From assembly GCA_047495785.1 (NCBI GenBank), contig JBLDXI010000032.1:4439782-4503781 (forward strand): 64,000 nucleotides of DNA, written 5' to 3'. How positions within the stretch are numbered: the stretch's first letter is position 1; each line of letters starts with the position of its first letter. The DNA comes from Lepidodermella squamata. Lineage: Eukaryota > Animalia > Gastrotricha. This document shows positions 9,763 through 64,000 of the stretch, piece after piece. The position numbers and the translations under genes were made by a program. The notes beneath the pieces are model-generated. The model was not told the origin of the DNA, ran no database searches, and was given only the letters and a program-made list of their open reading frames with translations.

Positions 9763-10011
9763 CTACTGTTCTAGATCATGATCCTGTACCTACTAAATAA
9801 TTATCAATTTCTTACAACTTGTTTAAAAAAGACACCGTCATTTACGATTGCCACGTGTCGAAGGTATTTATTACCTCTGCTTTTTAGCATTGACAATAAA
9901 ACATTCATACACAAAAAGGGGGTGCGCGAACAACAGCAGTGTAAAAGAAGGTTGAGAAGGGGTTACGGGAAAAGGGAAGAAAGGCAGTGGTGTGATTCGA
10001 TCTTCAGCTGT

Positions 10012-44700: not shown

Positions 44701-45807
44701 TGCAAAGAAAATTGGCGACGAAATTACAGAAAAAGTCGCTGTTCTAGAGGGAGTGCTAGCATCGGTTTGCCCGGAACTGGTATGTATATTTTAACCATTT
44801 CTTTCTTCTTTCCACTCTTTCATTTTGTCTCTGGTTTCGTGCATAGCCGTATAGTCGTGTAAGATAGCCCCGAATTTGCTTTTTCTAGCCAGCCATAGTG
44901 TCTATTGCCATTTGTACTCAGGTAACTACAATTTTGAACAGGAGGTACTATTTTGGACATTCCACGCATATTCTAAACGACGATATTATCTTTTTGCTTG
45001 TTAATCAAAATGGATATAGGATTATTGGAGAATTATCGTGAACAGTTGCGTGCGTCAAGTTTGATGAACAGGATATACATTGGCATTTCTTGAACTTGGA
45101 TTTATAAAGCTTTTTGTTTTCAGGTTGAGCGTTTGCAGAGCCAACTGCGAACCACACGAGACGAAGTTATCAGCCTAGTTTCAACCGAGTACGCCCTGCG
45201 GACCCCAATGTTGGGCGAAGTCCCGCGACATAACACGCTTCTAGCATCCATGGAAGAAATTCCTCAGCTCGAATCTAGTCACCAATCATTAGCTTCTAAT
45301 AGGAGCGGGCGACACTCACAGGCTTCTATTCATAATAGTACCACTGTCGGCGGTACCAACTCGCATGTTTCAAGTCAAATTGCTATCGATCAGAGCATAC
45401 TCGAAGAAGTGTTCGAAGATCTTTATCACGAGCTTACTTTTCCGGATCGAAGAATTCGAATCTCTGACCAAACAAGCGTTACTAGCCGATTTGTTCAAAT
45501 GAGAAGGCAGTCGTCGGTTGCATCAACCACCCTTGATAACAGCCGAGCGAACCGTCATCGAGAGCTGTCATTCAGCAGGTCTTGTTCTTCCGAAGCTCCG
45601 ACCGAACCTACTACAGCAAGACATCGAAGAAAACAAATGATTAGGAAGAAGCACGCTATTTTGGAGCCGAAGTTGTCTCTAAATCCCTCGCCTTCTAATC
45701 GTCAGCGAGAGTCACTTAGAAGGACACAAAGCGAGCCCGCTTCAGATCATTACAGCTCTTATTCAAGAGTTCTGCCAAAGCGCAAAAGCTGGGCAGAACA
45801 TTCATAA
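38717..45807 (+). CDS. Cav3: T-type voltage-gated calcium channel alpha-1 subunit (Cav3 family; multi-exon)
   Basis: Four S1-S6 repeats with S4 segments ([68 protein letters not shown]); Cav3-typical [18 protein letters not shown] and gating-brake helix; pores SLEGW, TQDAW, TFDGW, TGDNW; GCKFC...RSNFDSLL; [13 protein letters not shown]. Confidence 0.95.
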
Positions 45808-46146
45808 TAAATATAATTTTTCATGATGATACGAAATAAAACTGTGCGCACCAATAACTTTATTTTTAGACAGGATTCCCCGTAAGATGAGATGATGATA
45901 ACTTTTTCATTTTCTAGTCCGGAATCGCATTTTTCTGCGGCTTTGACTTTGCCAAAAAAATTTGAAGATAACTTTTTCCATTTAAAGCCGGAAAACTCAT
46001 TCTTTGACTTGCTGTGGTGTATGTGTGTATCTCTGATTTCACTCAATTTTTCAACGAATTCCTCATTGTCAGCCGGTTACGTTCATAAAATCAGGGCACC
46101 CGTGATAGGCACACACCAGTCACGAGAATAGAGGTTCCGCAAGGCT

Positions 46147-46256
46147 ATGCGAGCGGAGCGAGCATGCCCAACTTGACCTCTATAGTTCGTCTGGAAATTA
46201 GCTGATTTTCGAAGAATGATATTAGGCCACGTTGGCCATGCTCACTCCGTTCGCAT
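46147..46256. mobile_element. Small MITE-like inverted repeat
   Basis: ATGCGAGCGGAGCGAGCATGCCCAACTTG versus reverse complement of the right arm ATGCGAACGGAGTGAGCATGGCCAACGTG (~30-bp arms). Confidence 0.6.
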
Positions 46257-46846
46257 TGGCATGGTGGTTAAGGATTGTCATCGTGTATGTGTGTGTTTGC
46301 TTATCCGAAATCATACATCCATGCCGTCCCTGAGATGCGGAGTCAGGTGTTCTTGCTCCATATTAAGCAAACAATGGCATGAAATGTTAGCGGAAAATGT
46401 AGTTGAAATCGAAGACACCATTATTGCAGCAATAAAGTAATAGAGTAATAAGCAATAAAAGTTCAATTACTATTCACATGGATTTCAGCAAATTTTTAAA
46501 AAAAGTTAGAAAATTAGAGCATAGTTGAATCTGAACTAAGTGCCTGCCAAACTTGCTCGTTGATGCTTATGTTACAAAAAATCAGTTATCAGTGTGTTTT
46601 TTTGTTACTTGAACGCGTGCCAGAAATCGAATATCCACTGCGCAGTGGTGATTCATATTCTAAAATTAGACTGACCGAGGCGATAAAATATGATAGAATT
46701 AGACATAAATAAATTGTAAACATTTCAACATAAGTCTACTGCCTAGGAACAGTTTCATAACTTTGAAAAAATTACTTAGGTAATATTCCTCAAACGTTGA
46801 AGCAAAAGTTATGAAGGGTTTTACACTAGTGTCCTCAAACTTACTA

Positions 46847-46931
46847 TAGGGTTAGGGTTAGGGTTAGGGTTAGGGTTAGGGTTAGGGTTAGGGTTAGGGT
46901 TAGGGTTAGGGTTAGGGTTAGGGTTAGGGTT
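46847..46931 (+). repeat. Telomeric repeat tract 1, (TTAGGG)~14
   Basis: Perfect TTAGGG hexamers with the G-rich strand running rightwards. Confidence 0.98.
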
Positions 46932-47267
46932 TTTAACTAATTTAATACAGACGAGCTGTAACCGGGGTTTCTCCTAAGAGAAACCAGCCGGGCCCTACCA
47001 TTACTCCTTTCAGGGCTGTTTCAGAGGTCTTGGCCGCAGAGATAATATTTGATAGAATCCTTGATTGGATTCTATGTTAAGTAAATGCAAGGCAATGCCT
47101 TGATTTGTAAATGAATGCAAGGCATTGCCTTGATTTATGAGTGATTTATAGGCCTCGGCCCATCACTTAGGAGCCTATGAAGGCTGAGATCACCATTAAG
47201 AGTGATCTGGTTTAACAAAAGTCCATAAAGGCTTTTTGTGATATCTCTCAGTGGTGTGGAAAACCAG

Positions 47268-47333
47268 GAGGTAGCCAGTTATCAGACGCGTTTCGCTACT
47301 TGGCTAAGGTAGCTCTTCAGTGATTTTTACCTC
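47268..47333 (-). ncRNA. Type I hammerhead ribozyme A
   Basis: gaggtaaaaATCA-CTGAAGA-GCTAC-cttagccaa-GTAGC-GAAA-CGCG-TC^TGATaactggctacctc; intact core; predicted cleavage between 47285 and 47284. Confidence 0.92.
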
Positions 47334-47345
47334 ACAAAATGAGAG

Positions 47346-47381
47346 AATGATTTCAGTCCTATATTATAACCTCTTTAAATA
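47346..47381 (-). promoter_or_regulatory. Putative Pol II core promoter of element A
   Basis: TATTTAAA at 47381-47374, 33 nt upstream of the initiator-like A in TGAAATCATT (47355-47346); same layout as element B. Confidence 0.6.
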
Positions 47382-47521
47382 GGGTCGTCGTTTGCCTTGT
47401 TGTTTATGTTTTATCGTACCAGATGTGGTGTCACGTGCATTTTCAATTGTGTATGTCCACGTGTTGTTCACGCTGAGCGAAGTTCAAAGTTATTTTTGTC
47501 ACTTCTTTGTTGTCCTGATTT

Positions 47522-48248
47522 GATCGATCTGGAACCTTTGTCATTGGCCGTACATGTTTTTTGACCACATATTCGTGATAAGCAGACTCGATTTGACTAT
47601 TTCCATGTGATTTATCGAGAAATGCCTGGAGATCCGAAGAATTATGAAATTATTTGAAATGCCAAACGGCAAATTTCGGAACGCAAAATAGGTCATTTGG
47701 GATCGATCTGGAACCTTTGTCATTGGCCGTACATGTTTTTTGACCACATATTCGTGATAAGCAGACTCGATTTGACTATTTCCATGTGATTTATCGAGAA
47801 ATGCCTGGAGATCCGAAGAATTATGAAATTATTTGAAATGCCAAACGGCAAATTTCGGAACGCAAAATAGGTCATTTGGGATCGATCTGGAACCTTTGTC
47901 ATTGGCCGTACATGTTTTTTGACCACATATTCGTGATAAGCAGACTCGATTTGACTATTTCCATGTGATTTATCGAGAAATGCCTGGAGATCCGAAGAAT
48001 TATGAAATTATTTGAAATGCCAAACGGCAAATTTCGGAACGCAAAATAGGTCATTTGGGATCGATCTGGAACCTTTGTCATTGGCCGTACATGTTTTTTG
48101 ACCACATATTCGTGATAAGCAGACTCGATTTGACTATTTCCATGTGATTTATCGAGAAATGCCTGGAGATCCGAAGAATTATGAAATTATTTGAAATGCC
48201 AAACGGCAAATTTCGGAACTGAAAATAGGTCATTTGGGATCGATCTGG
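47522..48248. repeat. 179-bp tandem satellite, four copies plus 11 bp
   Basis: Units begin GATCGATCTGGAACC at 47522, 47701, 47880, 48059 and (truncated) 48238; only a 2-nt difference seen, in copy 4. Confidence 0.97.
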
Positions 48249-48268
48249 GGTTAGGGTTAGGGTTAGGG

Positions 48269-48309
<41 letters not shown>

Positions 48310-48320
48310 GGTTAGTTAGG
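48248..48320 (+). repeat. Telomeric repeat tract 2, (TTAGGG)~11 with one TTTAGGG variant
   Basis: Direct reading; merges into GTTAGGGTTAGTTAGG, the start of element B. Confidence 0.97.
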
Positions 48321-48918
48321 AGAGAATTACCAGACAGGTAGCCTAAGCACCCCGGCAGTTAGCTCTAATGCTACTAGAGAGCCAGGCCTGCATTTCAATA
48401 GCTTTAGCCCTATCCGAGGATAGGGATAGGGATAGGGATAGGGATAGAGATGGAGATGGAGATAGAGGTGCAGGTTAAATTCACGGTTTTAACCGCCTCT
48501 GACATGACACTGTGCTATTCAATAGCAAGAACTCAATTACCGTCTCAAAAGGGTACACTTCTGATGTAGGGATGAGATGAGGTCGTGATAAAGATTCGAT
48601 TTATCAAGTCTCATGCCTCAACAACGCGTTCAATCCTTTCCCTTTTGGCTTCATTCAATGAGCCACAATTGTAAATTCTTTTATTACCATCTCGTAAATC
48701 TCTGGTAGGTAGGTGGATGGTTACAACTCACTAAACATTGTAAAAGCCACCCCTATAGGGAAGCAAATTACAAATGGCAACCCATATAGGGAAGCATGAC
48801 TGGAAAGGCCACCCATGAAGGGAAGCAGATACAAATAGCAGCCTTTGCAAGGCTCTCGATGTGGTTAATCGAAAATAATAAGCAAACACCCTGTAAACAG
48901 TGATCATTAATGACAAAT

Positions 48919-48990
48919 AGCAACAACCCGAAAAAAACGTCAGACCGGTTTCGCCTGTGGGTAGCAGGCTCATCAGTGACTTTCGTTGCT
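48919..48990 (-). ncRNA. Type I hammerhead ribozyme B, copy 1
   Basis: agcaacgaaaGTCA-CTGATGA-GCCTG-ctaccca-CAGGC-GAAA-CCGG-TC^TGACgtttttttcgggttgttgct; predicted cleavage between 48943 and 48942. Confidence 0.93.
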
Positions 48991-49017
48991 TTCTTTGCTA
49001 GAAATAAAAGCTGGATA

Positions 49018-49052
49018 AATGATTTCAATGCAGTTTTTAGTGTGCTTTTATA
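49018..49052 (-). promoter_or_regulatory. Putative Pol II core promoter of element B (repeated in every unit)
   Basis: TATAAAAG at 49052-49045, 32 nt upstream of the A in TGAAATCATT (49027-49018); upstream AAAATGGCGG and GCCACGTGGC. Confidence 0.65.
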
Positions 49053-50523
49053 ACAGAAGTAGCACCGCCATTTTTTTCCCTTTCTACTAGCGCCACGTGG
49101 CATTAAGGCGCGAGAATTCGACCTTGGACTTTGACCTTGCTCTATTTTATAGCTATAGAGATAGAGATAGAGATAGGGATAGGGATAGAGATAGAGATAG
49201 AGATATGGTTAGAGATGGGGATATGGATAGGGATAGAGTTAGGGATGAAACCCTAAAAACTCTCACATGTCGATCCGATGTTTCCTTTCGCGTGAATATC
49301 AAATAAGATCAGATCAATGGCTAGTTCACTCAGAGTTCTCCACGGTGTCGTGCACAATAACAGCAATGTTTATTTGCTTTACAACGATGATACCAGTTCG
49401 ATTCCAACAGCGAATCTCTCCACCCTTGTATTGTCTTCAGATATTTCCCTTGTTGTTGACCGATTACTAAATCACTCTCCGCGGAGTTGATTATCACAAC
49501 GCTGCATTTCCACGTCAGCAGTTAAGAACATGCTGACACTGATTAATCGTTTTGACCACTAATAGCAAAACAATAATTCTTCCGACGGCAAGTCACCGGA
49601 CTAGATCCGAGAAAGTATGTTCTAAGCTAGCTATCGTTGATCTTTTACGTCCAACGGGGATCCCTGATCACGTTCCGAGTCTAAGATTCCTGAGAAACGT
49701 GTTCATTCGAAGCGATGGAGTAGGCGATGCAACAAAGGAACTAGTAGAAGTTCATACGATTTAAACATGAGAATGCCACTAACTAAATTTAGGGCTCAGA
49801 ATGTGTGCCTGTCAGGAAATAAACTTGCAGCAGAAGGGAGGACCCATACGTTTCATTGAAAGTAGGCAAGGCCGCTCGTTTGCACCGTACTCATGACTCG
49901 AGCTCAAATGTTAGGGTTAGTTAGGAGAGAATTACCAGACAGGTAGCCTAAGCACCCCGGCAGTTAGCTCTAATGCTACTAGAGAGCCAGGCCTGCATTT
50001 CAATAGCTTTAGCCCTATCCGAGGATAGGGATAGGGATAGGGATAGGGATAGAGATGGAGATGGAGATAGAGGTGCAGGTTAAATTCACGGTTTTAACCG
50101 CCTCTGACATGACACTGTGCTATTCAATAGCAAGAACTCAATTACCGTCTCAAAAGGGTACACTTCTGATGTAGGGATGAGATGAGGTCGTGATAAAGAT
50201 TCGATTTATCAAGTCTCATGCCTCAACAACGCGTTCAATCCTTTCCCTTTTGGCTTCATTCAATGAGCCACAATTGTAAATTCTTTTATTACCATCTCGT
50301 AAATCTCTGGTAGGTAGGTGGATGGTTACAACTCACTAAACATTGTAAAAGCCACCCCTATAGGGAAGCAAATTACAAATGGCAACCCATATAGGGAAGC
50401 ATGACTGGAAAGGCCACCCATGAAGGGAAGCAGATACAAATAGCAGCCTTTGCAAGGCTCTCGATGTGGTTAATCGAAAATAATAAGCAAACACCCTGTA
50501 AACAGTGATCATTAATGACAAAT

Positions 50524-50595
50524 AGCAACAACCCGAAAAAAACGTCAGACCGGTTTCGCCTGTGGGTAGCAGGCTCATCAGTGACTTTCGTTGCT
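50524..50595 (-). ncRNA. Hammerhead ribozyme B, copy 2
   Basis: Same sequence as copy 1, +1605. Confidence 0.92.
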
Positions 50596-52128
50596 TTCTT
50601 TGCTAGAAATAAAAGCTGGATAAATGATTTCAATGCAGTTTTTAGTGTGCTTTTATAACAGAAGTAGCACCGCCATTTTTTTCCCTTTCTACTAGCGCCA
50701 CGTGGCATTAAGGCGCGAGAATTCGACCTTGGACTTTGACCTTGCTCTATTTTATAGCTATAGAGATAGAGATAGAGATAGGGATAGGGATAGAGATAGA
50801 GATAGAGATATGGTTAGAGATGGGGATATGGATAGGGATAGAGTTAGGGATGAAACCCTAAAAACTCTCACATGTCGATCCGATGTTTCCTTTCGCGTGA
50901 ATATCAAATAAGATCAGATCAATGGCTAGTTCACTCAGAGTTCTCCACGGTGTCGTGCACAATAACAGCAATGTTTATTTGCTTTACAACGATGATACCA
51001 GTTCGATTCCAACAGCGAATCTCTCCACCCTTGTATTGTCTTCAGATATTTCCCTTGTTGTTGACCGATTACTAAATCACTCTCCGCGGAGTTGATTATC
51101 ACAACGCTGCATTTCCACGTCAGCAGTTAAGAACATGCTGACACTGATTAATCGTTTTGACCACTAATAGCAAAACAATAATTCTTCCGACGGCAAGTCA
51201 CCGGACTAGATCCGAGAAAGTATGTTCTAAGCTAGCTATCGTTGATCTTTTACGTCCAACGGGGATCCCTGATCACGTTCCGAGTCTAAGATTCCTGAGA
51301 AACGTGTTCATTCGAAGCGATGGAGTAGGCGATGCAACAAAGGAACTAGTAGAAGTTCATACGATTTAAACATGAGAATGCCACTAACTAAATTTAGGGC
51401 TCAGAATGTGTGCCTGTCAGGAAATAAACTTGCAGCAGAAGGGAGGACCCATACGTTTCATTGAAAGTAGGCAAGGCCGCTCGTTTGCACCGTACTCATG
51501 ACTCGAGCTCAAATGTTAGGGTTAGTTAGGAGAGAATTACCAGACAGGTAGCCTAAGCACCCCGGCAGTTAGCTCTAATGCTACTAGAGAGCCAGGCCTG
51601 CATTTCAATAGCTTTAGCCCTATCCGAGGATAGGGATAGGGATAGGGATAGGGATAGAGATGGAGATGGAGATAGAGGTGCAGGTTAAATTCACGGTTTT
51701 AACCGCCTCTGACATGACACTGTGCTATTCAATAGCAAGAACTCAATTACCGTCTCAAAAGGGTACACTTCTGATGTAGGGATGAGATGAGGTCGTGATA
51801 AAGATTCGATTTATCAAGTCTCATGCCTCAACAACGCGTTCAATCCTTTCCCTTTTGGCTTCATTCAATGAGCCACAATTGTAAATTCTTTTATTACCAT
51901 CTCGTAAATCTCTGGTAGGTAGGTGGATGGTTACAACTCACTAAACATTGTAAAAGCCACCCCTATAGGGAAGCAAATTACAAATGGCAACCCATATAGG
52001 GAAGCATGACTGGAAAGGCCACCCATGAAGGGAAGCAGATACAAATAGCAGCCTTTGCAAGGCTCTCGATGTGGTTAATCGAAAATAATAAGCAAACACC
52101 CTGTAAACAGTGATCATTAATGACAAAT

Positions 52129-52200
52129 AGCAACAACCCGAAAAAAACGTCAGACCGGTTTCGCCTGTGGGTAGCAGGCTCATCAGTGACTTTCGTTGCT
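52129..52200 (-). ncRNA. Hammerhead ribozyme B, copy 3
   Basis: Same sequence as copy 1. Confidence 0.92.
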
Positions 52201-53733
52201 TTCTTTGCTAGAAATAAAAGCTGGATAAATGATTTCAATGCAGTTTTTAGTGTGCTTTTATAACAGAAGTAGCACCGCCATTTTTTTCCCTTTCTACTAG
52301 CGCCACGTGGCATTAAGGCGCGAGAATTCGACCTTGGACTTTGACCTTGCTCTATTTTATAGCTATAGAGATAGAGATAGAGATAGGGATAGGGATAGAG
52401 ATAGAGATAGAGATATGGTTAGAGATGGGGATATGGATAGGGATAGAGTTAGGGATGAAACCCTAAAAACTCTCACATGTCGATCCGATGTTTCCTTTCG
52501 CGTGAATATCAAATAAGATCAGATCAATGGCTAGTTCACTCAGAGTTCTCCACGGTGTCGTGCACAATAACAGCAATGTTTATTTGCTTTACAACGATGA
52601 TACCAGTTCGATTCCAACAGCGAATCTCTCCACCCTTGTATTGTCTTCAGATATTTCCCTTGTTGTTGACCGATTACTAAATCACTCTCCGCGGAGTTGA
52701 TTATCACAACGCTGCATTTCCACGTCAGCAGTTAAGAACATGCTGACACTGATTAATCGTTTTGACCACTAATAGCAAAACAATAATTCTTCCGACGGCA
52801 AGTCACCGGACTAGATCCGAGAAAGTATGTTCTAAGCTAGCTATCGTTGATCTTTTACGTCCAACGGGGATCCCTGATCACGTTCCGAGTCTAAGATTCC
52901 TGAGAAACGTGTTCATTCGAAGCGATGGAGTAGGCGATGCAACAAAGGAACTAGTAGAAGTTCATACGATTTAAACATGAGAATGCCACTAACTAAATTT
53001 AGGGCTCAGAATGTGTGCCTGTCAGGAAATAAACTTGCAGCAGAAGGGAGGACCCATACGTTTCATTGAAAGTAGGCAAGGCCGCTCGTTTGCACCGTAC
53101 TCATGACTCGAGCTCAAATGTTAGGGTTAGTTAGGAGAGAATTACCAGACAGGTAGCCTAAGCACCCCGGCAGTTAGCTCTAATGCTACTAGAGAGCCAG
53201 GCCTGCATTTCAATAGCTTTAGCCCTATCCGAGGATAGGGATAGGGATAGGGATAGGGATAGAGATGGAGATGGAGATAGAGGTGCAGGTTAAATTCACG
53301 GTTTTAACCGCCTCTGACATGACACTGTGCTATTCAATAGCAAGAACTCAATTACCGTCTCAAAAGGGTACACTTCTGATGTAGGGATGAGATGAGGTCG
53401 TGATAAAGATTCGATTTATCAAGTCTCATGCCTCAACAACGCGTTCAATCCTTTCCCTTTTGGCTTCATTCAATGAGCCACAATTGTAAATTCTTTTATT
53501 ACCATCTCGTAAATCTCTGGTAGGTAGGTGGATGGTTACAACTCACTAAACATTGTAAAAGCCACCCCTATAGGGAAGCAAATTACAAATGGCAACCCAT
53601 ATAGGGAAGCATGACTGGAAAGGCCACCCATGAAGGGAAGCAGATACAAATAGCAGCCTTTGCAAGGCTCTCGATGTGGTTAATCGAAAATAATAAGCAA
53701 ACACCCTGTAAACAGTGATCATTAATGACAAAT

Positions 53734-53805
53734 AGCAACAACCCGAAAAAAACGTCAGACCGGTTTCGCCTGTGGGTAGCAGGCTCATCAGTGACTTTCG
53801 TTGCT
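53734..53805 (-). ncRNA. Hammerhead ribozyme B, copy 4
   Basis: Same sequence as copy 1. Confidence 0.92.
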
Positions 53806-55338
53806 TTCTTTGCTAGAAATAAAAGCTGGATAAATGATTTCAATGCAGTTTTTAGTGTGCTTTTATAACAGAAGTAGCACCGCCATTTTTTTCCCTTTCT
53901 ACTAGCGCCACGTGGCATTAAGGCGCGAGAATTCGACCTTGGACTTTGACCTTGCTCTATTTTATAGCTATAGAGATAGAGATAGAGATAGGGATAGGGA
54001 TAGAGATAGAGATAGAGATATGGTTAGAGATGGGGATATGGATAGGGATAGAGTTAGGGATGAAACCCTAAAAACTCTCACATGTCGATCCGATGTTTCC
54101 TTTCGCGTGAATATCAAATAAGATCAGATCAATGGCTAGTTCACTCAGAGTTCTCCACGGTGTCGTGCACAATAACAGCAATGTTTATTTGCTTTACAAC
54201 GATGATACCAGTTCGATTCCAACAGCGAATCTCTCCACCCTTGTATTGTCTTCAGATATTTCCCTTGTTGTTGACCGATTACTAAATCACTCTCCGCGGA
54301 GTTGATTATCACAACGCTGCATTTCCACGTCAGCAGTTAAGAACATGCTGACACTGATTAATCGTTTTGACCACTAATAGCAAAACAATAATTCTTCCGA
54401 CGGCAAGTCACCGGACTAGATCCGAGAAAGTATGTTCTAAGCTAGCTATCGTTGATCTTTTACGTCCAACGGGGATCCCTGATCACGTTCCGAGTCTAAG
54501 ATTCCTGAGAAACGTGTTCATTCGAAGCGATGGAGTAGGCGATGCAACAAAGGAACTAGTAGAAGTTCATACGATTTAAACATGAGAATGCCACTAACTA
54601 AATTTAGGGCTCAGAATGTGTGCCTGTCAGGAAATAAACTTGCAGCAGAAGGGAGGACCCATACGTTTCATTGAAAGTAGGCAAGGCCGCTCGTTTGCAC
54701 CGTACTCATGACTCGAGCTCAAATGTTAGGGTTAGTTAGGAGAGAATTACCAGACAGGTAGCCTAAGCACCCCGGCAGTTAGCTCTAATGCTACTAGAGA
54801 GCCAGGCCTGCATTTCAATAGCTTTAGCCCTATCCGAGGATAGGGATAGGGATAGGGATAGGGATAGAGATGGAGATGGAGATAGAGGTGCAGGTTAAAT
54901 TCACGGTTTTAACCGCCTCTGACATGACACTGTGCTATTCAATAGCAAGAACTCAATTACCGTCTCAAAAGGGTACACTTCTGATGTAGGGATGAGATGA
55001 GGTCGTGATAAAGATTCGATTTATCAAGTCTCATGCCTCAACAACGCGTTCAATCCTTTCCCTTTTGGCTTCATTCAATGAGCCACAATTGTAAATTCTT
55101 TTATTACCATCTCGTAAATCTCTGGTAGGTAGGTGGATGGTTACAACTCACTAAACATTGTAAAAGCCACCCCTATAGGGAAGCAAATTACAAATGGCAA
55201 CCCATATAGGGAAGCATGACTGGAAAGGCCACCCATGAAGGGAAGCAGATACAAATAGCAGCCTTTGCAAGGCTCTCGATGTGGTTAATCGAAAATAATA
55301 AGCAAACACCCTGTAAACAGTGATCATTAATGACAAAT

Positions 55339-55410
55339 AGCAACAACCCGAAAAAAACGTCAGACCGGTTTCGCCTGTGGGTAGCAGGCTCATCAGTGAC
55401 TTTCGTTGCT
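55339..55410 (-). ncRNA. Hammerhead ribozyme B, copy 5
   Basis: Same sequence as copy 1. Confidence 0.92.
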
Positions 55411-56943
55411 TTCTTTGCTAGAAATAAAAGCTGGATAAATGATTTCAATGCAGTTTTTAGTGTGCTTTTATAACAGAAGTAGCACCGCCATTTTTTTCCC
55501 TTTCTACTAGCGCCACGTGGCATTAAGGCGCGAGAATTCGACCTTGGACTTTGACCTTGCTCTATTTTATAGCTATAGAGATAGAGATAGAGATAGGGAT
55601 AGGGATAGAGATAGAGATAGAGATATGGTTAGAGATGGGGATATGGATAGGGATAGAGTTAGGGATGAAACCCTAAAAACTCTCACATGTCGATCCGATG
55701 TTTCCTTTCGCGTGAATATCAAATAAGATCAGATCAATGGCTAGTTCACTCAGAGTTCTCCACGGTGTCGTGCACAATAACAGCAATGTTTATTTGCTTT
55801 ACAACGATGATACCAGTTCGATTCCAACAGCGAATCTCTCCACCCTTGTATTGTCTTCAGATATTTCCCTTGTTGTTGACCGATTACTAAATCACTCTCC
55901 GCGGAGTTGATTATCACAACGCTGCATTTCCACGTCAGCAGTTAAGAACATGCTGACACTGATTAATCGTTTTGACCACTAATAGCAAAACAATAATTCT
56001 TCCGACGGCAAGTCACCGGACTAGATCCGAGAAAGTATGTTCTAAGCTAGCTATCGTTGATCTTTTACGTCCAACGGGGATCCCTGATCACGTTCCGAGT
56101 CTAAGATTCCTGAGAAACGTGTTCATTCGAAGCGATGGAGTAGGCGATGCAACAAAGGAACTAGTAGAAGTTCATACGATTTAAACATGAGAATGCCACT
56201 AACTAAATTTAGGGCTCAGAATGTGTGCCTGTCAGGAAATAAACTTGCAGCAGAAGGGAGGACCCATACGTTTCATTGAAAGTAGGCAAGGCCGCTCGTT
56301 TGCACCGTACTCATGACTCGAGCTCAAATGTTAGGGTTAGTTAGGAGAGAATTACCAGACAGGTAGCCTAAGCACCCCGGCAGTTAGCTCTAATGCTACT
56401 AGAGAGCCAGGCCTGCATTTCAATAGCTTTAGCCCTATCCGAGGATAGGGATAGGGATAGGGATAGGGATAGAGATGGAGATGGAGATAGAGGTGCAGGT
56501 TAAATTCACGGTTTTAACCGCCTCTGACATGACACTGTGCTATTCAATAGCAAGAACTCAATTACCGTCTCAAAAGGGTACACTTCTGATGTAGGGATGA
56601 GATGAGGTCGTGATAAAGATTCGATTTATCAAGTCTCATGCCTCAACAACGCGTTCAATCCTTTCCCTTTTGGCTTCATTCAATGAGCCACAATTGTAAA
56701 TTCTTTTATTACCATCTCGTAAATCTCTGGTAGGTAGGTGGATGGTTACAACTCACTAAACATTGTAAAAGCCACCCCTATAGGGAAGCAAATTACAAAT
56801 GGCAACCCATATAGGGAAGCATGACTGGAAAGGCCACCCATGAAGGGAAGCAGATACAAATAGCAGCCTTTGCAAGGCTCTCGATGTGGTTAATCGAAAA
56901 TAATAAGCAAACACCCTGTAAACAGTGATCATTAATGACAAAT

Positions 56944-57015
56944 AGCAACAACCCGAAAAAAACGTCAGACCGGTTTCGCCTGTGGGTAGCAGGCTCATCA
57001 GTGACTTTCGTTGCT
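56944..57015 (-). ncRNA. Hammerhead ribozyme B, copy 6
   Basis: Same sequence as copy 1. Confidence 0.92.
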
Positions 57016-58548
57016 TTCTTTGCTAGAAATAAAAGCTGGATAAATGATTTCAATGCAGTTTTTAGTGTGCTTTTATAACAGAAGTAGCACCGCCATTTTT
57101 TTCCCTTTCTACTAGCGCCACGTGGCATTAAGGCGCGAGAATTCGACCTTGGACTTTGACCTTGCTCTATTTTATAGCTATAGAGATAGAGATAGAGATA
57201 GGGATAGGGATAGAGATAGAGATAGAGATATGGTTAGAGATGGGGATATGGATAGGGATAGAGTTAGGGATGAAACCCTAAAAACTCTCACATGTCGATC
57301 CGATGTTTCCTTTCGCGTGAATATCAAATAAGATCAGATCAATGGCTAGTTCACTCAGAGTTCTCCACGGTGTCGTGCACAATAACAGCAATGTTTATTT
57401 GCTTTACAACGATGATACCAGTTCGATTCCAACAGCGAATCTCTCCACCCTTGTATTGTCTTCAGATATTTCCCTTGTTGTTGACCGATTACTAAATCAC
57501 TCTCCGCGGAGTTGATTATCACAACGCTGCATTTCCACGTCAGCAGTTAAGAACATGCTGACACTGATTAATCGTTTTGACCACTAATAGCAAAACAATA
57601 ATTCTTCCGACGGCAAGTCACCGGACTAGATCCGAGAAAGTATGTTCTAAGCTAGCTATCGTTGATCTTTTACGTCCAACGGGGATCCCTGATCACGTTC
57701 CGAGTCTAAGATTCCTGAGAAACGTGTTCATTCGAAGCGATGGAGTAGGCGATGCAACAAAGGAACTAGTAGAAGTTCATACGATTTAAACATGAGAATG
57801 CCACTAACTAAATTTAGGGCTCAGAATGTGTGCCTGTCAGGAAATAAACTTGCAGCAGAAGGGAGGACCCATACGTTTCATTGAAAGTAGGCAAGGCCGC
57901 TCGTTTGCACCGTACTCATGACTCGAGCTCAAATGTTAGGGTTAGTTAGGAGAGAATTACCAGACAGGTAGCCTAAGCACCCCGGCAGTTAGCTCTAATG
58001 CTACTAGAGAGCCAGGCCTGCATTTCAATAGCTTTAGCCCTATCCGAGGATAGGGATAGGGATAGGGATAGGGATAGAGATGGAGATGGAGATAGAGGTG
58101 CAGGTTAAATTCACGGTTTTAACCGCCTCTGACATGACACTGTGCTATTCAATAGCAAGAACTCAATTACCGTCTCAAAAGGGTACACTTCTGATGTAGG
58201 GATGAGATGAGGTCGTGATAAAGATTCGATTTATCAAGTCTCATGCCTCAACAACGCGTTCAATCCTTTCCCTTTTGGCTTCATTCAATGAGCCACAATT
58301 GTAAATTCTTTTATTACCATCTCGTAAATCTCTGGTAGGTAGGTGGATGGTTACAACTCACTAAACATTGTAAAAGCCACCCCTATAGGGAAGCAAATTA
58401 CAAATGGCAACCCATATAGGGAAGCATGACTGGAAAGGCCACCCATGAAGGGAAGCAGATACAAATAGCAGCCTTTGCAAGGCTCTCGATGTGGTTAATC
58501 GAAAATAATAAGCAAACACCCTGTAAACAGTGATCATTAATGACAAAT

Positions 58549-58620
58549 AGCAACAACCCGAAAAAAACGTCAGACCGGTTTCGCCTGTGGGTAGCAGGCT
58601 CATCAGTGACTTTCGTTGCT
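58549..58620 (-). ncRNA. Hammerhead ribozyme B, copy 7
   Basis: Same sequence as copy 1. Confidence 0.92.
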
Positions 58621-60153
58621 TTCTTTGCTAGAAATAAAAGCTGGATAAATGATTTCAATGCAGTTTTTAGTGTGCTTTTATAACAGAAGTAGCACCGCCA
58701 TTTTTTTCCCTTTCTACTAGCGCCACGTGGCATTAAGGCGCGAGAATTCGACCTTGGACTTTGACCTTGCTCTATTTTATAGCTATAGAGATAGAGATAG
58801 AGATAGGGATAGGGATAGAGATAGAGATAGAGATATGGTTAGAGATGGGGATATGGATAGGGATAGAGTTAGGGATGAAACCCTAAAAACTCTCACATGT
58901 CGATCCGATGTTTCCTTTCGCGTGAATATCAAATAAGATCAGATCAATGGCTAGTTCACTCAGAGTTCTCCACGGTGTCGTGCACAATAACAGCAATGTT
59001 TATTTGCTTTACAACGATGATACCAGTTCGATTCCAACAGCGAATCTCTCCACCCTTGTATTGTCTTCAGATATTTCCCTTGTTGTTGACCGATTACTAA
59101 ATCACTCTCCGCGGAGTTGATTATCACAACGCTGCATTTCCACGTCAGCAGTTAAGAACATGCTGACACTGATTAATCGTTTTGACCACTAATAGCAAAA
59201 CAATAATTCTTCCGACGGCAAGTCACCGGACTAGATCCGAGAAAGTATGTTCTAAGCTAGCTATCGTTGATCTTTTACGTCCAACGGGGATCCCTGATCA
59301 CGTTCCGAGTCTAAGATTCCTGAGAAACGTGTTCATTCGAAGCGATGGAGTAGGCGATGCAACAAAGGAACTAGTAGAAGTTCATACGATTTAAACATGA
59401 GAATGCCACTAACTAAATTTAGGGCTCAGAATGTGTGCCTGTCAGGAAATAAACTTGCAGCAGAAGGGAGGACCCATACGTTTCATTGAAAGTAGGCAAG
59501 GCCGCTCGTTTGCACCGTACTCATGACTCGAGCTCAAATGTTAGGGTTAGTTAGGAGAGAATTACCAGACAGGTAGCCTAAGCACCCCGGCAGTTAGCTC
59601 TAATGCTACTAGAGAGCCAGGCCTGCATTTCAATAGCTTTAGCCCTATCCGAGGATAGGGATAGGGATAGGGATAGGGATAGAGATGGAGATGGAGATAG
59701 AGGTGCAGGTTAAATTCACGGTTTTAACCGCCTCTGACATGACACTGTGCTATTCAATAGCAAGAACTCAATTACCGTCTCAAAAGGGTACACTTCTGAT
59801 GTAGGGATGAGATGAGGTCGTGATAAAGATTCGATTTATCAAGTCTCATGCCTCAACAACGCGTTCAATCCTTTCCCTTTTGGCTTCATTCAATGAGCCA
59901 CAATTGTAAATTCTTTTATTACCATCTCGTAAATCTCTGGTAGGTAGGTGGATGGTTACAACTCACTAAACATTGTAAAAGCCACCCCTATAGGGAAGCA
60001 AATTACAAATGGCAACCCATATAGGGAAGCATGACTGGAAAGGCCACCCATGAAGGGAAGCAGATACAAATAGCAGCCTTTGCAAGGCTCTCGATGTGGT
60101 TAATCGAAAATAATAAGCAAACACCCTGTAAACAGTGATCATTAATGACAAAT

Positions 60154-60225
60154 AGCAACAACCCGAAAAAAACGTCAGACCGGTTTCGCCTGTGGGTAGC
60201 AGGCTCATCAGTGACTTTCGTTGCT
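60154..60225 (-). ncRNA. Hammerhead ribozyme B, copy 8
   Basis: Same sequence as copy 1. Confidence 0.92.
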
Positions 60226-61540
60226 TTCTTTGCTAGAAATAAAAGCTGGATAAATGATTTCAATGCAGTTTTTAGTGTGCTTTTATAACAGAAGTAGCAC
60301 CGCCATTTTTTTCCCTTTCTACTAGCGCCACGTGGCATTAAGGCGCGAGAATTCGACCTTGGACTTTGACCTTGCTCTATTTTATAGCTATAGAGATAGA
60401 GATAGAGATAGGGATAGGGATAGAGATAGAGATAGAGATATGGTTAGAGATGGGGATATGGATAGGGATAGAGTTAGGGATGAAACCCTAAAAACTCTCA
60501 CATGTCGATCCGATGTTTCCTTTCGCGTGAATATCAAATAAGATCAGATCAATGGCTAGTTCACTCAGAGTTCTCCACGGTGTCGTGCACAATAACAGCA
60601 ATGTTTATTTGCTTTACAACGATGATACCAGTTCGATTCCAACAGCGAATCTCTCCACCCTTGTATTGTCTTCAGATATTTCCCTTGTTGTTGACCGATT
60701 ACTAAATCACTCTCCGCGGAGTTGATTATCACAACGCTGCATTTCCACGTCAGCAGTTAAGAACATGCTGACACTGATTAATCGTTTTGACCACTAATAG
60801 CAAAACAATAATTCTTCCGACGGCAAGTCACCGGACTAGATCCGAGAAAGTATGTTCTAAGCTAGCTATCGTTGATCTTTTACGTCCAACGGGGATCCCT
60901 GATCACGTTCCGAGTCTAAGATTCCTGAGAAACGTGTTCATTCGAAGCGATGGAGTAGGCGATGCAACAAAGGAACTAGTAGAAGTTCATACGATTTAAA
61001 CATGAGAATGCCACTAACTAAATTTAGGGCTCAGAATGTGTGCCTGTCAGGAAATAAACTTGCAGCAGAAGGGAGGACCCATACGTTTCATTGAAAGTAG
61101 GCAAGGCCGCTCGTTTGCACCGTACTCATGACTCGAGCTCAAATGTTAGGGTTAGTTAGGAGAGAATTACCAGACAGGTAGCCTAAGCACCCCGGCAGTT
61201 AGCTCTAATGCTACTAGAGAGCCAGGCCTGCATTTCAATAGCTTTAGCCCTATCCGAGGATAGGGATAGGGATAGGGATAGGGATAGAGATGGAGATGGA
61301 GATAGAGGTGCAGGTTAAATTCACGGTTTTAACCGCCTCTGACATGACACTGTGCTATTCAATAGCAAGAACTCAATTACCGTCTCAAAAGGGTACACTT
61401 CTGATGTAGGGATGAGATGAGGTCGTGATAAAGATTCGATTTATCAAGTCTCATGCCTCAACAACGCGTTCAATCCTTTCCCTTTTGGCTTCATTCAATG
61501 AGCCACAATTGTAAATTCTTTTATTACCATCTCGTAAATC

Positions 61541-63983
61541 TCTGGTAATTCTCTCCTAACTAACCCTAACATTTGAGCTCGAGTCATGAGTACGGTGCAA
61601 ACGAGCGGCCTTGCCTACTTTCAATGAAACGTATGGGTCCTCCCTTCTGCTGCAAGTTTATTTCCTGACAGGCACACATTCTGAGCCCTAAATTTAGTTA
61701 GTGGCATTCTCATGTTTAAATCGTATGAACTTCTACTAGTTCCTTTGTTGCATCGCCTACTCCATCGCTTCGAATGAACACGTTTCTCAGGAATCTTAGA
61801 CTCGGAACGTGATCAGGGATCCCCGTTGGACGTAAAAGATCAACGATAGCTAGCTTAGAACATACTTTCTCGGATCTAGTCCGGTGACTTGCCGTCGGAA
61901 GAATTATTGTTTTGCTATTAGTGGTCAAAACGATTAATCAGTGTCAGCATGTTCTTAACTGCTGACGTGGAAATGCAGCGTTGTGATAATCAACTCCGCG
62001 GAGAGTGATTTAGTAATCGGTCAACAACAAGGGAAATATCTGAAGACAATACAAGGGTGGAGAGATTCGCTGTTGGAATCGAACTGGTATCATCGTTGTA
62101 AAGCAAATAAACATTGCTGTTATTGTGCACGACACCGTGGAGAACTCTGAGTGAACTAGCCATTGATCTGATCTTATTTGATATTCACGCGAAAGGAAAC
62201 ATCGGATCGACATGTGAGAGTTTTTAGGGTTTCATCCCTAACTCTATCCCTATCCATATCCCCATCTCTAACCATATCTCTATCTCTATCTCTATCCCTA
62301 TCCCTATCTCTATCTCTATCTCTATAGCTATAAAATAGAGCAAGGTCAAAGTCCAAGGTCGAATTCTCGCGCCTTAATGCCACGTGGCGCTAGTAGAAAG
62401 GGAAAAAAATGGCGGTGCTACTTCTGTTATAAAAGCACACTAAAAACTGCATTGAAATCATTTATCCAGCTTTTATTTCTAGCAAAGAAAGCAACGAAAG
62501 TCACTGATGAGCCTGCTACCCACAGGCGAAACCGGTCTGACGTTTTTTTCGGGTTGTTGCTATTTGTCATTAATGATCACTGTTTACAGGTGTTTGCTTA
62601 TTATTTTCGATTAACCACATCGAGAGCCTTGCAAAGGCTGCTATTTGTATCTGCTTCCCTTCATGGGTGGCCTTTCCAGTCATGCTTCCCTATATGGGTT
62701 GCCATTTGTAATTTGCTTCCCTATAGGGGTGGCTTTTACAATGTTTAGTGAGTTGTAACCATCCACCTACCTACCAGAGATTTACGAGATGGTAATAAAA
62801 GAATTTACAATTGTGGCTCATTGAATGAAGCCAAAAGGGAAAGGATTGAACGCGTTGTTGAGGCATGAGACTTGATAAATCGAATCTTTATCACGACCTC
62901 ATCTCATCCCTACATCAGAAGTGTACCCTTTTGAGACGGTAATTGAGTTCTTGCTATTGAATAGCACAGTGTCATGTCAGAGGCGGTTAAAACCGTGAAT
63001 TTAACCTGCACCTCTATCTCCATCTCCATCTCTATCCCTATCCCTATCCCTATCCCTATCCTCGGATAGGGCTAAAGCTATTGAAATGCAGGCCTGGCTC
63101 TCTAGTAGCATTAGAGCTAACTGCCGGGGTGCTTAGGCTACCTGTCTGGTAATTCTCTCCTAACTAACCCTAACATTTGAGCTCGAGTCATGAGTACGGT
63201 GCAAACGAGCGGCCTTGCCTACTTTCAATGAAACGTATGGGTCCTCCCTTCTGCTGCAAGTTTATTTCCTGACAGGCACACATTCTGAGCCCTAAATTTA
63301 GTTAGTGGCATTCTCATGTTTAAATCGTATGAACTTCTACTAGTTCCTTTGTTGCATCGCCTACTCCATCGCTTCGAATGAACACGTTTCTCAGGAATCT
63401 TAGACTCGGAACGTGATCAGGGATCCCCGTTGGACGTAAAAGATCAACGATAGCTAGCTTAGAACATACTTTCTCGGATCTAGTCCGGTGACTTGCCGTC
63501 GGAAGAATTATTGTTTTGCTATTAGTGGTCAAAACGATTAATCAGTGTCAGCATGTTCTTAACTGCTGACGTGGAAATGCAGCGTTGTGATAATCAACTC
63601 CGCGGAGAGTGATTTAGTAATCGGTCAACAACAAGGGAAATATCTGAAGACAATACAAGGGTGGAGAGATTCGCTGTTGGAATCGAACTGGTATCATCGT
63701 TGTAAAGCAAATAAACATTGCTGTTATTGTGCACGACACCGTGGAGAACTCTGAGTGAACTAGCCATTGATCTGATCTTATTTGATATTCACGCGAAAGG
63801 AAACATCGGATCGACATGTGAGAGTTTTTAGGGTTTCATCCCTAACTCTATCCCTATCCATATCCCCATCTCTAACCATATCTCTATCTCTATCTCTATC
63901 CCTATCCCTATCTCTATCTCTATCTCTATAGCTATAAAATAGAGCAAGGTCAAAGTCCAAGGTCGAATTCTCGCGCCTTAATG
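61541..63983 (+). mobile_element. Inverted arm of the element B array (~1.5 units)
   Basis: Reverse complement of the array, starting at the TCTGGTA microhomology (61541-61547); 1-bp deletion near 62590; diverges into other sequence at 63984. Confidence 0.9.
62490..62561 (+). ncRNA. Hammerhead ribozyme B, copy 9 (inverted arm)
   Basis: GTCACTGATGAGCCTGCTACCCACAGGCGAAACCGGTCTGAC read directly on the + strand; predicted cleavage after 62537. Confidence 0.93.
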
Positions 63984-64000
63984 ACTCTCACGAGATGTGT

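What the first reader, a model, noticed from the sequence alone, without database searches (positions are those of the whole stretch)
46847..63983. Chain of non-coding, hammerhead-bearing elements stacked on telomeric repeats: candidate telomere-targeted retrozyme system
Seen: telomere tract, element A, satellite, telomere tract, element B x8+. A and B each carry a minus-strand type I hammerhead and are oriented so that the RNA runs into CCCUAA-type sequence; neither has a protein ORF. Established: endonuclease-less Penelope-like elements (Athena, Terminons) attach to G-rich telomeric overhangs in this polarity via CCCUAA-type tails and carry hammerheads in their pLTRs; retrozymes are non-autonomous hammerhead repeats that form circular RNAs. 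Inference: these are non-autonomous RNA elements that extend chromosome ends using an RT supplied in trans, alternating with telomerase-added tracts. A 1.6-kb telomere-phased non-coding unit is longer than the few-hundred-bp animal retrozymes I know of.
Basis: partly seen in the sequence, partly recalled or inferred. Interest (0 to 1): 0.93.

Follow-up and report, generated by a model that had tools for sequence, protein, structure and literature searches.

The report
Hammerhead-bearing non-coding repeats stacked on telomere tracts
Beyond the last gene of an animal chromosome arm lie two TTAGGG tracts, each followed by non-coding repeats carrying a self-cleaving hammerhead RNA motif, an arrangement that looks like protein-less passengers of the telomere-attaching Penelope-like retroelements known from bdelloid rotifers.

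Summary
After the last gene, a T-type calcium channel, come (TTAGGG)14, element A (590 bp), a 179-bp satellite x4.1, (TTAGGG)11, then 8.25 identical 1605-bp B units. A and B each carry a complete type I hammerhead on the minus strand: 2 in 49.9 kb against 0 in 200 shuffles. Its helices covary, and helix III is a 2-bp palindrome that can only form in a dimer. Neither element has a credible ORF.

- At 61541-61547 the array flips head-to-head at a 7-nt microhomology.
- All B-B junctions are identical, so B was not built by separate additions alternating with telomerase.
- B looks like a composite of three modules, each led by a G-rich hexamer tract.

Best reading (0.6): these are non-coding or truncated units of the Penelope-like (Athena/Terminon) kind. 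They were copied from read-through or circular RNA onto the telomeric G-strand, starting at an internal CCCUAA-type motif, by a reverse transcriptase (RT) supplied in trans.

No RT lies in this window. Terminal position, transcription and cleavage are untested. DNA-level subtelomeric recombination remains a live rival (0.25).

Other first-stage notes of this scan, unchecked, report endonuclease-less Penelope-like RTs at other TTAGGG ends of the same genome.

The parts
46847..46931 (+). Telomere tract 1, (TTAGGG)14. It is joined directly to unique DNA about 1 kb after the last gene.
46932..47521 (-). Element A, 590 bp and non-coding. Its sense strand is the minus strand, and its 3' end (...UUAGUUAAAAA) runs into the CCCTAA complement of tract 1.
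   Evidence: RNA from the cleavage site to the 3' end folds into a chain of near-perfect hairpins (z = -8.0 sense, -6.4 antisense).
47268..47334 (-). Hammerhead of A. Helix Ib is GAGGUA/UACCUC, helix Ia AUCA/UGAU, the core CUGAAGA, helix II GCUAC/GUAGC, followed by GAAA-CGCG-UC. The predicted cut is between 47285 and 47284.
47346..47383 (-). TATA-like boxes and the shared 10-mer TGAAATCATT (initiator-like TCATT), which starts 35 nt upstream of the hammerhead core of A.
   Evidence: compare the pseudo-LTR TATA + initiator in PMC3846280
47522..48248 (.). 179-bp satellite x4.1, lying 5' of A in the sense orientation. It has no hammerhead. Its last, partial copy ends at ...GATCGATCTGG, directly followed by tract 2.
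48248..48315 (+). Telomere tract 2, (TTAGGG)11 with one GGGTTTAGGG variant. It runs in phase into the first B unit.
48306..61547 (-). B array: 8.25 units of 1605 bp, 100% identical, with the sense strand on the minus strand. On the + strand each unit starts with TTAGGGTTAGTTAGG. The last unit is 5'-truncated after 402 nt.
48919..48990 (-). Hammerhead of B, first copy, repeated every 1605 bp up to the copy whose core begins at 60211. Helix Ib is AGCAAC/GUUGCU, helix Ia GUCA/UGAC, the core CUGAUGA, helix II GCCUG/CAGGC, followed by GAAA-CCGG-UC. The predicted cut is between 48943 and 48942.
49018..49052 (-). TATAAAA (49052-49046) and TGAAATCATT (49027-49018), the latter starting 51 nt upstream of the hammerhead core of B.
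48418..48467 (+). Degenerate G-rich hexamer tract (GGATAG/GAGATG)n inside B, with the same polarity as the telomere G-strand.
49155..49246 (+). Degenerate G-rich hexamer tract (ATAGAG/ATAGGG)n inside B, 15 copies without indels. It ends in GTTAGGGATGAAACCCTAA.
61541..61547 (.). Inversion junction: the 7-nt microhomology TCTGGTA shared by the truncated forward unit and the start of the inverted array. The arrangement is head-to-head (5' to 5'), with a 366-nt asymmetric spacer between the arms.
   Evidence: I16
61541..63983 (+). Inverted B array of 1.52 units with the sense strand on the + strand. Its hammerhead core is at 62504. It differs from the forward units by one deletion in a G/C homopolymer.
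63984..64000 (.). 17 nt that are not B. What follows cannot be seen from this window.

Best explanation
This is a chain of non-coding sequences of the Penelope-like (Athena/Terminon) kind, laid down distal to an original telomere.

Proposed mechanism:
1. An RNA is transcribed from the minus strand. A TATA/initiator-like cassette sits just upstream of a dimer-dependent type I hammerhead.
2. That RNA pairs through a CCCUAA-type motif with the 3' G-rich telomeric overhang.
3. A reverse transcriptase (RT) supplied in trans extends the overhang, so the element ends up antisense on the G-strand with its 3' end towards the centromere.
4. A plus its satellite was added to tract 1, was 5'-truncated inside the satellite, and was healed by telomerase (tract 2).
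5. B was then primed at its internal CCUAACUAACCCUAA motif on a template longer than one unit, either a read-through multimer or a circle. This gave 8.25 scar-free identical units in one event, or in a few events followed by amplification.
6. Synthesis ended in a snap-back at a 7-nt microhomology, which produced the head-to-head inverted copies.

Shown: the anatomy, the polarity, the phased junction, the hammerhead motifs and the absence of ORFs.
Inferred: the RNA templating, the trans RT, and the order and number of events.
For: (1) Both real TTAGGG tracts are on the + strand, and both elements have their hammerhead strand on the minus strand.

(2) The first B unit begins exactly at the unit's own TTAGGGTTAGTTAGG, in phase with tract 2. 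That motif covers 15 of 1605 positions, so a chance start there has a probability of about 1%.

(3) Two complete hammerheads are found against 0 in 200 shuffles. On an alignment of A, B and an unrelated metagenomic copy, 97% of cells pair and 4 pairs show compensatory changes, against 18-39% paired when the partners are slid. Helix III is ACCGGU or ACGCGU, a 2-nt loop that cannot close in a monomer, and cofolding uses it between two copies (ddG -7.3 and -8.9 kcal/mol). This is the architecture described for metazoan and PLE hammerheads that act as dimers (PMC4209133).

(4) A and B share no similarity except TGAAATCATT, which starts 35 nt (A) and 51 nt (B) upstream of the hammerhead core. TATA-like boxes lie 6-19 nt further upstream. 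About 0.003 such co-located 10-mers are expected by chance. PLE pseudo-LTRs carry a TATA box plus an initiator-like sequence (PMC3846280).

(5) Head-to-head inverted, 5'-truncated copies at a palindrome or microhomology are typical of PLE insertions and are ascribed to self-priming (PMC8557442; PMC3846280).

(6) A purified PLE RT initiates inside RNA transcribed from tandem copies and uses uncleaved RNA (PMC11167929). PLE pseudo-LTRs can mobilise unrelated sequence in trans.

(7) The DNA of A+satellite and of B continues without scar 5' of the cassette and across the hammerhead cut site. The template was therefore not a monomer started or cut there.

(8) Unchecked scan notes report endonuclease-less PLE RTs at other TTAGGG ends of this genome.
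Against: - There is no RT or any PLE protein in the 64-kb window, and no sequence link to a coding partner could be tested.
- The hammerheads fail Rfam gathering scores.
- The hammerhead lies 353 nt (A) and 637 nt (B) from the 3' junction, rather than next to the C-rich tail.
- Whole-unit B RNA is not unusually structured (z = -0.6). The hairpins of A fold equally on both strands, so they do not mark an RNA strand.
- Identical units and junctions, and a phased start at a telomere-like motif, could equally come from DNA recombination.
- The window does not reach a terminal tract, and the distal part is inverted.
Confidence: 0.6

Rival explanations
1. Ordinary subtelomeric repeat DNA. A, the 179-bp satellite and B are subtelomeric repeats that derive from old PLE or retrozyme sequence. 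They are now moved and amplified only at the DNA level, by unequal sister exchange, break-induced replication between chromosome ends, or ALT-like copying. This resembles yeast Y' elements, which are separated by short internal telomere tracts. The hammerheads would be relics.
For: - The units and all eight junctions are 100% identical, as expected for recent DNA amplification.
- The short TTAGGGTTAG motif at each junction could serve as a recombination or microhomology site.
- The foldback inversion with 7-nt microhomology and a 366-nt spacer is the classic product of repair of a resected chromosome end.
- Multimeric retrozyme arrays are enriched at chromosome termini in Xenopus, where expansion by unequal crossover is proposed (preprint 10.64898/2026.07.22.740005).
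- B RNA is not notably structured.
Against: - Two unrelated elements keep intact, covarying hammerheads with the same upstream cassette, which argues for ongoing selection on an RNA function.
- Both lie in the one polarity predicted for overhang priming.
- The whole chain lies distal to a perfect telomere tract that abuts unique DNA.
Confidence: 0.25
2. Assembly or amplification artefact. The elements are real, but the copy number, the perfect identity and above all the inversion at 61547 come from repeat collapse or expansion, consensus polishing, chimeric long reads or whole-genome amplification chimeras.
For: - Perfect identity over 13 kb, followed by an inverted junction near the end of the window.
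- The only difference in the inverted arm is a homopolymer indel, typical of long-read error.
- The sequence changes again 17 nt before the window ends.
Against: - The junction is not a zero-loop palindrome, as missed-adapter or template-complement reads would give. It has a 366-nt asymmetric spacer and a 7-nt microhomology.
- A 13-kb array is within the span of single long reads.
- The proximal part (tracts, A, satellite, first B junction) does not depend on it.
Confidence: 0.08
3. One reading: each B unit was added separately to the chromosome end, alternating with telomerase.
For: Each unit carries a short telomere-like motif at its proximal end.
Against: - All eight junctions are identical and hold only the 15-nt motif.
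- There is no variable telomerase tract, no 5' truncation and no sequence difference in any internal unit.
Confidence: 0.04

Closest known systems
Athena elements and Terminons of bdelloid rotifers (endonuclease-deficient Penelope-like elements; Gladyshev & Arkhipova 2007; Arkhipova et al. 2017, as summarised in PMC8557442 and PMC7761336)
   Same: - They attach to G-rich telomeric overhangs through short reverse-complement telomeric repeats, with the 3' end towards the centromere.
- They carry type I hammerhead motifs.
- They form chains of units separated by short telomeric stretches and have a modular make-up.
   Different: - There is no RT or any other ORF here.
- The host uses TTAGGG, not the bdelloid TGTGGG (PMC7943196), and is not close to any named species in the protein search (best named hits 37-43% identity for a calcium channel; best overall 49%, unnamed).
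- The hammerhead is 353-637 nt from the telomere junction rather than adjacent.
- B forms an array of identical units.
Animal non-LTR retrozymes (Cervera & de la Pena 2020, PMC7229834; Li et al. 2026 preprint)
   Same: They are non-coding tandem repeats with a type I hammerhead in every unit. Helix III is short and palindromic, so the ribozyme acts as a dimer. They are proposed to be mobilised by PLE or Terminon RTs.
   Different: - The B unit is 1605 bp against about 150-450 bp.
- B RNA is not highly self-paired (z = -0.6).
- B is phased on a telomere tract.
- A is a single copy.
- Circular RNA is untested.
Canonical endonuclease-bearing Penelope-like elements and their pseudo-LTRs (PMC3846280, PMC11167929)
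   Same: - The pseudo-LTR carries a TATA box plus an initiator-like promoter, and a hammerhead.
- They form tandem or partial-tandem organisation.
- Head-to-head inverted 5'-truncated copies occur at microhomologies or palindromes.
- Reverse transcription initiates internally on multimeric RNA.
- Foreign sequence can be mobilised in trans.
   Different: Those elements insert inside chromosomes with target-site duplications, using a GIY-YIG nuclease. Here the junctions are with telomere repeats and no ORF is present.
Drosophila HeT-A/TART/TAHRE and yeast Y' elements
   Same: They form head-to-tail arrays at chromosome ends with 3' ends facing the centromere (HeT-A; my own knowledge). Y' elements are subtelomeric units separated by short telomere tracts and amplified by recombination (my own knowledge).
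   Different: Those elements encode proteins, lack ribozymes, and belong to unrelated families.

Membership tests
Hammerhead ribozyme, type I | Conserved core CUGANGA ... GAAA ... UH with helices I and II flanking it, helix I open, and helices II and III closed | tested here: met
   a full motif in A and in every B unit, 0 in 200 shuffles. Covariation in helices I and II is shown.
Hammerhead ribozyme, type I | Score at or above the gathering threshold of an Rfam hammerhead model | tested here: not met
   Searches gave no match. One search gave only 18 bits (RAGATH-1-hammerhead, threshold 56.3) and 13.5 bits (HH9, threshold 52). The shortfall is expected because helix III is minimal.
Hammerhead ribozyme, type I | Self-cleavage | not testable with these tools
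   This needs in vitro transcription of monomeric and dimeric constructs.
Endonuclease-deficient Penelope-like elements (Athena/Coprina) and Terminons | PLE-type reverse transcriptase ORF without a GIY-YIG domain | tested here: not met
   There is no ORF over 111 aa in 46847-63983, and none of the ORFs scanned reaches a Pfam cut-off. None of the ten large ORFs scanned elsewhere in the window is an RT. These sequences are therefore at most non-autonomous or truncated relatives, not members by the RT criterion.
Endonuclease-deficient Penelope-like elements (Athena/Coprina) and Terminons | The 3' end carries reverse-complement telomeric repeats and abuts G-strand telomere tracts, with the 3' end proximal | tested here: met
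   A runs into tract 1. B starts in phase with tract 2 at its own TTAGGGTTAGTTAGG.
Endonuclease-deficient Penelope-like elements (Athena/Coprina) and Terminons | Hammerhead adjacent to the C-rich 3' repeats | tested here: not met
   The cut sites lie 353 nt (A) and 637 nt (B) upstream of the junction. In B, degenerate C-rich tracts lie about 180 nt upstream of the hammerhead.
Endonuclease-deficient Penelope-like elements (Athena/Coprina) and Terminons | Location at chromosome termini | tested here: inconclusive
   The chain is distal to the last gene and to a telomere tract, and the G-strand polarity points off the right end. However, the window ends in inverted B plus 17 unknown nt.
Animal non-LTR retrozymes | Tandem non-coding repeats, each unit with a type I hammerhead | tested here: met
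   Met for B. A is a single copy, and the 179-bp satellite has no hammerhead.
Animal non-LTR retrozymes | Unit of a few hundred bp whose RNA is highly self-paired | tested here: not met
   The B unit is 1605 bp, and its monomer fold has z = -0.6. Only the 357-nt stretch from the cut site of A to its 3' end is strongly paired (z = -8).
Animal non-LTR retrozymes | Expressed as circular RNA | not testable with these tools
   No transcriptome data are available here.

The most novel reading that the evidence does not exclude
B is a 1.6-kb hammerhead-processed circular (or endlessly read-through) RNA that acts as a giant telomerase-like template. The telomeric G-overhang pairs with its internal CCUAACUAACCCUAA motif, and a trans-acting endonuclease-less Penelope-like RT copies it by rolling-circle reverse transcription. 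This extends an animal TTAGGG chromosome end by many identical units in a single event. It would be a non-coding retrozyme that parasitises, or assists, a telomere-attaching retroelement system outside the rotifers.
Probability: 0.2. Interest if true: 0.85.

Novelty: new variant of a known kind. Interest (0 to 1): 0.62.

Why it matters
Two open questions in this field are what hammerheads do in Penelope-like elements and how protein-less retrozymes are mobilised.

This locus shows two unrelated non-coding elements with the same promoter-plus-hammerhead cassette, sitting on telomere tracts in the polarity expected for overhang priming. One of them forms scar-free identical multimers that begin exactly at a telomere-complementary motif. 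Together these give concrete, testable predictions: internal priming on a multimeric or circular RNA by an endonuclease-less RT.

Among animals, the papers read here describe telomere-attaching PLEs only in bdelloid rotifers, with one mention of endonuclease-deficient PLEs in a shrimp. If confirmed genome-wide, this would therefore extend that biology to an animal with canonical TTAGGG telomeres. It would also bear on the proposed kinship between Penelope-like RTs and telomerase.

Tried and rejected
- Rfam at gathering score on the whole window and at E<=10 on 46000-52000 gave no hammerhead. Only a 121-nt local scan gave sub-threshold alignments.
- Minimum-free-energy folding of the isolated hammerhead regions is not distinctive (z = -0.4 and -0.15). 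The energy model forbids the 2-nt helix III loop, so monomer folding cannot be used as a test.
- An exact look-up of the 111-aa ORF of B in the assembly collection found nothing on record.
- A look-up of B by sequence in the scan's notes came back blank.
- The hammerhead pattern shared by A and B found only two environmental contigs in the metagenome collection, from a different, ORF-bearing tandem element. It found nothing in the viral contigs.
- No tRNA-like part is present.
- A against B, and both against the rest of the window, show no meaningful similarity. A and B are therefore not variants of one element, and nothing proximal is related to them.
- The hairpins of A as a marker of an RNA strand: rejected, because the antisense strand folds nearly as well.
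- The weak hammerhead-like hit at 42089-42046 inside the channel gene is chance. Its helix II has 4 bp that need a G-U pair, and it fails the full-motif scan.
- The two key papers, Arkhipova 2017 and Gladyshev & Arkhipova 2007, are not held. What I say about them comes from other papers' summaries and my own memory.

Full report
**Setting.** The window is from an animal. ORFs at 41059-45807 encode a four-domain voltage-gated channel (Pfam Ion_trans). Its best named relatives are T-type calcium channels of many phyla at only 37-43% identity, and the best unnamed hits reach 49%, so the host has no close named relative in that database. Bdelloid rotifers, the classic hosts of Athena and Terminons, use TGTGGG telomeres (PMC7943196). 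This genome uses TTAGGG, so it is not a bdelloid. About 1 kb after the channel gene, unique DNA is joined directly to a perfect (TTAGGG)14 tract.

**The observation.** Tandem Repeats Finder, the repeat finder, direct reading and a pattern search (21 matches against 0.18 expected, all on the + strand, in two places only) confirm this chain:
- tract 1, 46847-46931
- element A, 46932-47521
- a 179-bp satellite x4.1, 47522-48248
- tract 2, 48248-48315
- a 1605-bp unit B, repeated 8.25 times from 48306 to 61547 at 100% identity

The longest ORF in A or B is 111 aa. None of the nine ORFs of 55 aa or more that I scanned reaches a Pfam cut-off.

- At 61541-61547 the array flips. The ninth unit stops after 402 nt. 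Across a 7-nt microhomology (TCTGGTA) the sequence continues as the reverse complement of B for 1.52 units, up to 63983. The two blocks are head-to-head (5' to 5'), with a 366-nt asymmetric spacer between the arms.
- The final 17 nt of the window are not B.

**The hammerheads.**
- Rfam does not call them. A local scan aligns the core to two hammerhead models below threshold.
- A scan for the full motif (helix I of at least 4 bp, CUGANGA, helix II of at least 4 bp, GAAA, short helix III, UH) finds exactly two in the non-redundant 49.9 kb. Both are on the minus strand, one in A and one in B. None is found in 200 dinucleotide shuffles.
- Both have the same architecture with different letters: helix Ia of 4 bp, an internal loop, helix Ib of 6 bp, helix II of 5 bp, then GAAA-C-(CG or GC)-G-UC.
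- On an alignment of A, B and an unrelated metagenomic copy, 97% of cells pair and four pairs carry compensatory changes. Only 18-39% pair when the partners are slid.
- Helix III is a palindrome (ACCGGU, ACGCGU) whose 2-nt loop cannot close in a monomer. Cofolding two copies uses it intermolecularly (ddG -7.3 and -8.9 kcal/mol).
- This is the architecture described for metazoan type I and Penelope-like-element (PLE) hammerheads that work as dimers (PMC4209133).
- A 4-bp complement between loop 2 and the internal loop of helix I exists in both (ACCC/GGGU in B, GCCA/UGGC in A). By my estimate this is only weakly significant (about 0.02 jointly).

**Shared cassette.** A and B have no similarity apart from the hammerhead and a 10-mer, TGAAATCATT. 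It starts 35 nt (A) and 51 nt (B) upstream of the hammerhead core, and TATA-like boxes lie 6-19 nt further upstream. A 10-mer match somewhere between the two elements is expected by chance (about 0.9). One placed within 60 nt upstream of both hammerheads is not (about 0.003, judged post hoc). PLE pseudo-LTRs are described as carrying a TATA box about 20 bp from an initiator-like TCACT (PMC3846280).

**Junction logic.** The two real tracts and both elements have the polarity expected if the G-rich 3' overhang primed cDNA synthesis on an RNA whose 3' part carries CCCUAA-type sequence. The element is antisense on the G-strand, with its 3' end proximal.

The first B unit begins in phase with tract 2, exactly at the unit's own TTAGGGTTAGTTAGG. 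That motif occupies 15 of 1605 positions, so a chance start there is about 1%.

However, all eight B-B junctions are identical. They contain only this motif, with no variable telomerase tract, no truncation and no substitution.

The DNA also runs without scar across the predicted hammerhead cut site and 5' of the promoter-like cassette, both in every B unit and in A+satellite. If RNA was the template, it was therefore neither a hammerhead-cut linear monomer nor a transcript started at the unit's own cassette. It was a read-through multimer or a circle. This agrees with biochemistry on a purified PLE protein, which initiates reverse transcription inside RNA made from tandem copies and uses uncleaved RNA (PMC11167929).

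For A, the same logic suggests that A+satellite is the 3' part of a longer element, truncated inside the satellite and then healed by telomerase. The last satellite copy stops at ...GATCGATCTGG, followed directly by GGTTAGGG.

**Composite B.** On the + strand B carries three G-rich hexamer tracts of telomere polarity:
- TTAGGGTTAGTTAGG at 48306-48320
- (GGATAG/GAGATG)n at 48418-48467
- (ATAGAG/ATAGGG)n at 49155-49246, ending in GTTAGGGATGAAACCCTAA

They divide B into modules of about 100, 690 and 660 nt, and only the middle one has the hammerhead. B therefore looks like a fossil chain that has become one amplifiable unit. By my recollection of Arkhipova 2017, this recalls the modular build of Terminons.

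**RNA structure.** The RNA from the cut site of A to its 3' end is a string of near-perfect hairpins (z = -8.0). The antisense strand folds almost as well (z = -6.4), so this does not mark a strand. The 3' part of B gives z = -2.8 and the whole B monomer z = -0.6. That is unlike the highly self-paired 170-400-nt retrozyme circles (PMC7229834).

**The inversion.** Head-to-head inverted, 5'-truncated copies with a palindrome or microhomology at the junction are a hallmark of PLE insertions and are ascribed to self-priming (PMC8557442; PMC3846280). The same structure is the classic outcome of fold-back repair of a resected chromosome end, and of some amplification chimeras. It is not a zero-loop palindrome, which argues against a simple read artefact. 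I cannot decide between these from one window.

**Relatives elsewhere.** The hammerhead pattern shared by A and B found two environmental contigs. They carry tandem 1.55-1.8-kb units, 83-96% alike. Each unit has the same hammerhead subtype, CCCTAACC motifs upstream, and an ORF of 238-341 aa with no Pfam match. Kilobase-sized tandem units with this hammerhead are thus not unique to this genome. Nothing was found in the viral contigs.

**Other notes of this scan.** First-stage notes on other pieces of the same genome, unchecked by me, describe endonuclease-less PLE RTs, hammerheads and TTAGGG chains at several other chromosome ends. One followed-up case has element copies joined to the telomere at an internal telomere-complementary 10-mer. 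The scan has therefore found this system before on other DNA of this genome. These notes are leads for the missing RT partner, not evidence.

**Verdict.** The most likely explanation (0.6) is RNA-templated, overhang-primed addition of non-coding or truncated units of the Penelope-like, Athena/Terminon kind, by an RT supplied in trans. B would have been copied from a multimeric or circular template. DNA-level subtelomeric amplification of PLE-derived repeats is the main rival (0.25). An artefact could explain the array length and the inversion, but not the proximal chain (0.08).

By the RT criterion these sequences are not members of the Athena/Terminon family. By size and folding B is not a classical retrozyme. 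They work like a telomere-attached, non-coding variant of both.

Noticed in passing
L001:1-3119 and L002:1-1677 (metagenome contigs Ga0075030_100061259 and Ga0194135_10134631): Tandem units of about 1.55-1.8 kb, 83-96% alike. Each has a hammerhead of the same subtype as A and B (GUCA-CUGAGGA...GAAACCGGUC-UGAC), CCCTAACC motifs 100-200 nt upstream, and an ORF of 238-341 aa with no Pfam hit. This is possibly a coding relative of large hammerhead-bearing tandem elements in an unknown eukaryote.
   Followed up: partly
window 41059-45807 (+): A four-domain T-type-like voltage-gated calcium channel gene with long exons and gaps of about 50 bp between ORFs. It is the last gene, about 1 kb before the first telomere tract, so the unique subtelomere is extremely short.
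   Followed up: partly
window 1700-13600: A family of repeated segments (at about 2050, 4360, 8020, 10400 and 13350; 62-96% alike) overlapping ORFs rich in short GC-rich tandem repeats on both strands. They look like a tandemly duplicated low-complexity protein gene family. The one member scanned against Pfam (9778-11037) has no hit.
   Followed up: no
window 29259-31391 (-): A 710-aa ORF with no Pfam match at E<=1.
   Followed up: no
window 63984-64000: The inverted B array stops abruptly, and 17 nt of different sequence follow. They share only 8 nt (ACTCTCAC) with a B segment next to the 49155-49246 tract. Either another junction or the edge of an assembly problem lies here.
   Followed up: no
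window 49240-49262 (+): GTTAGGGATGAAACCCTAA: a short hairpin made of one telomere repeat and its complement, sitting at the distal edge of the degenerate hexamer tract inside B.
   Followed up: no
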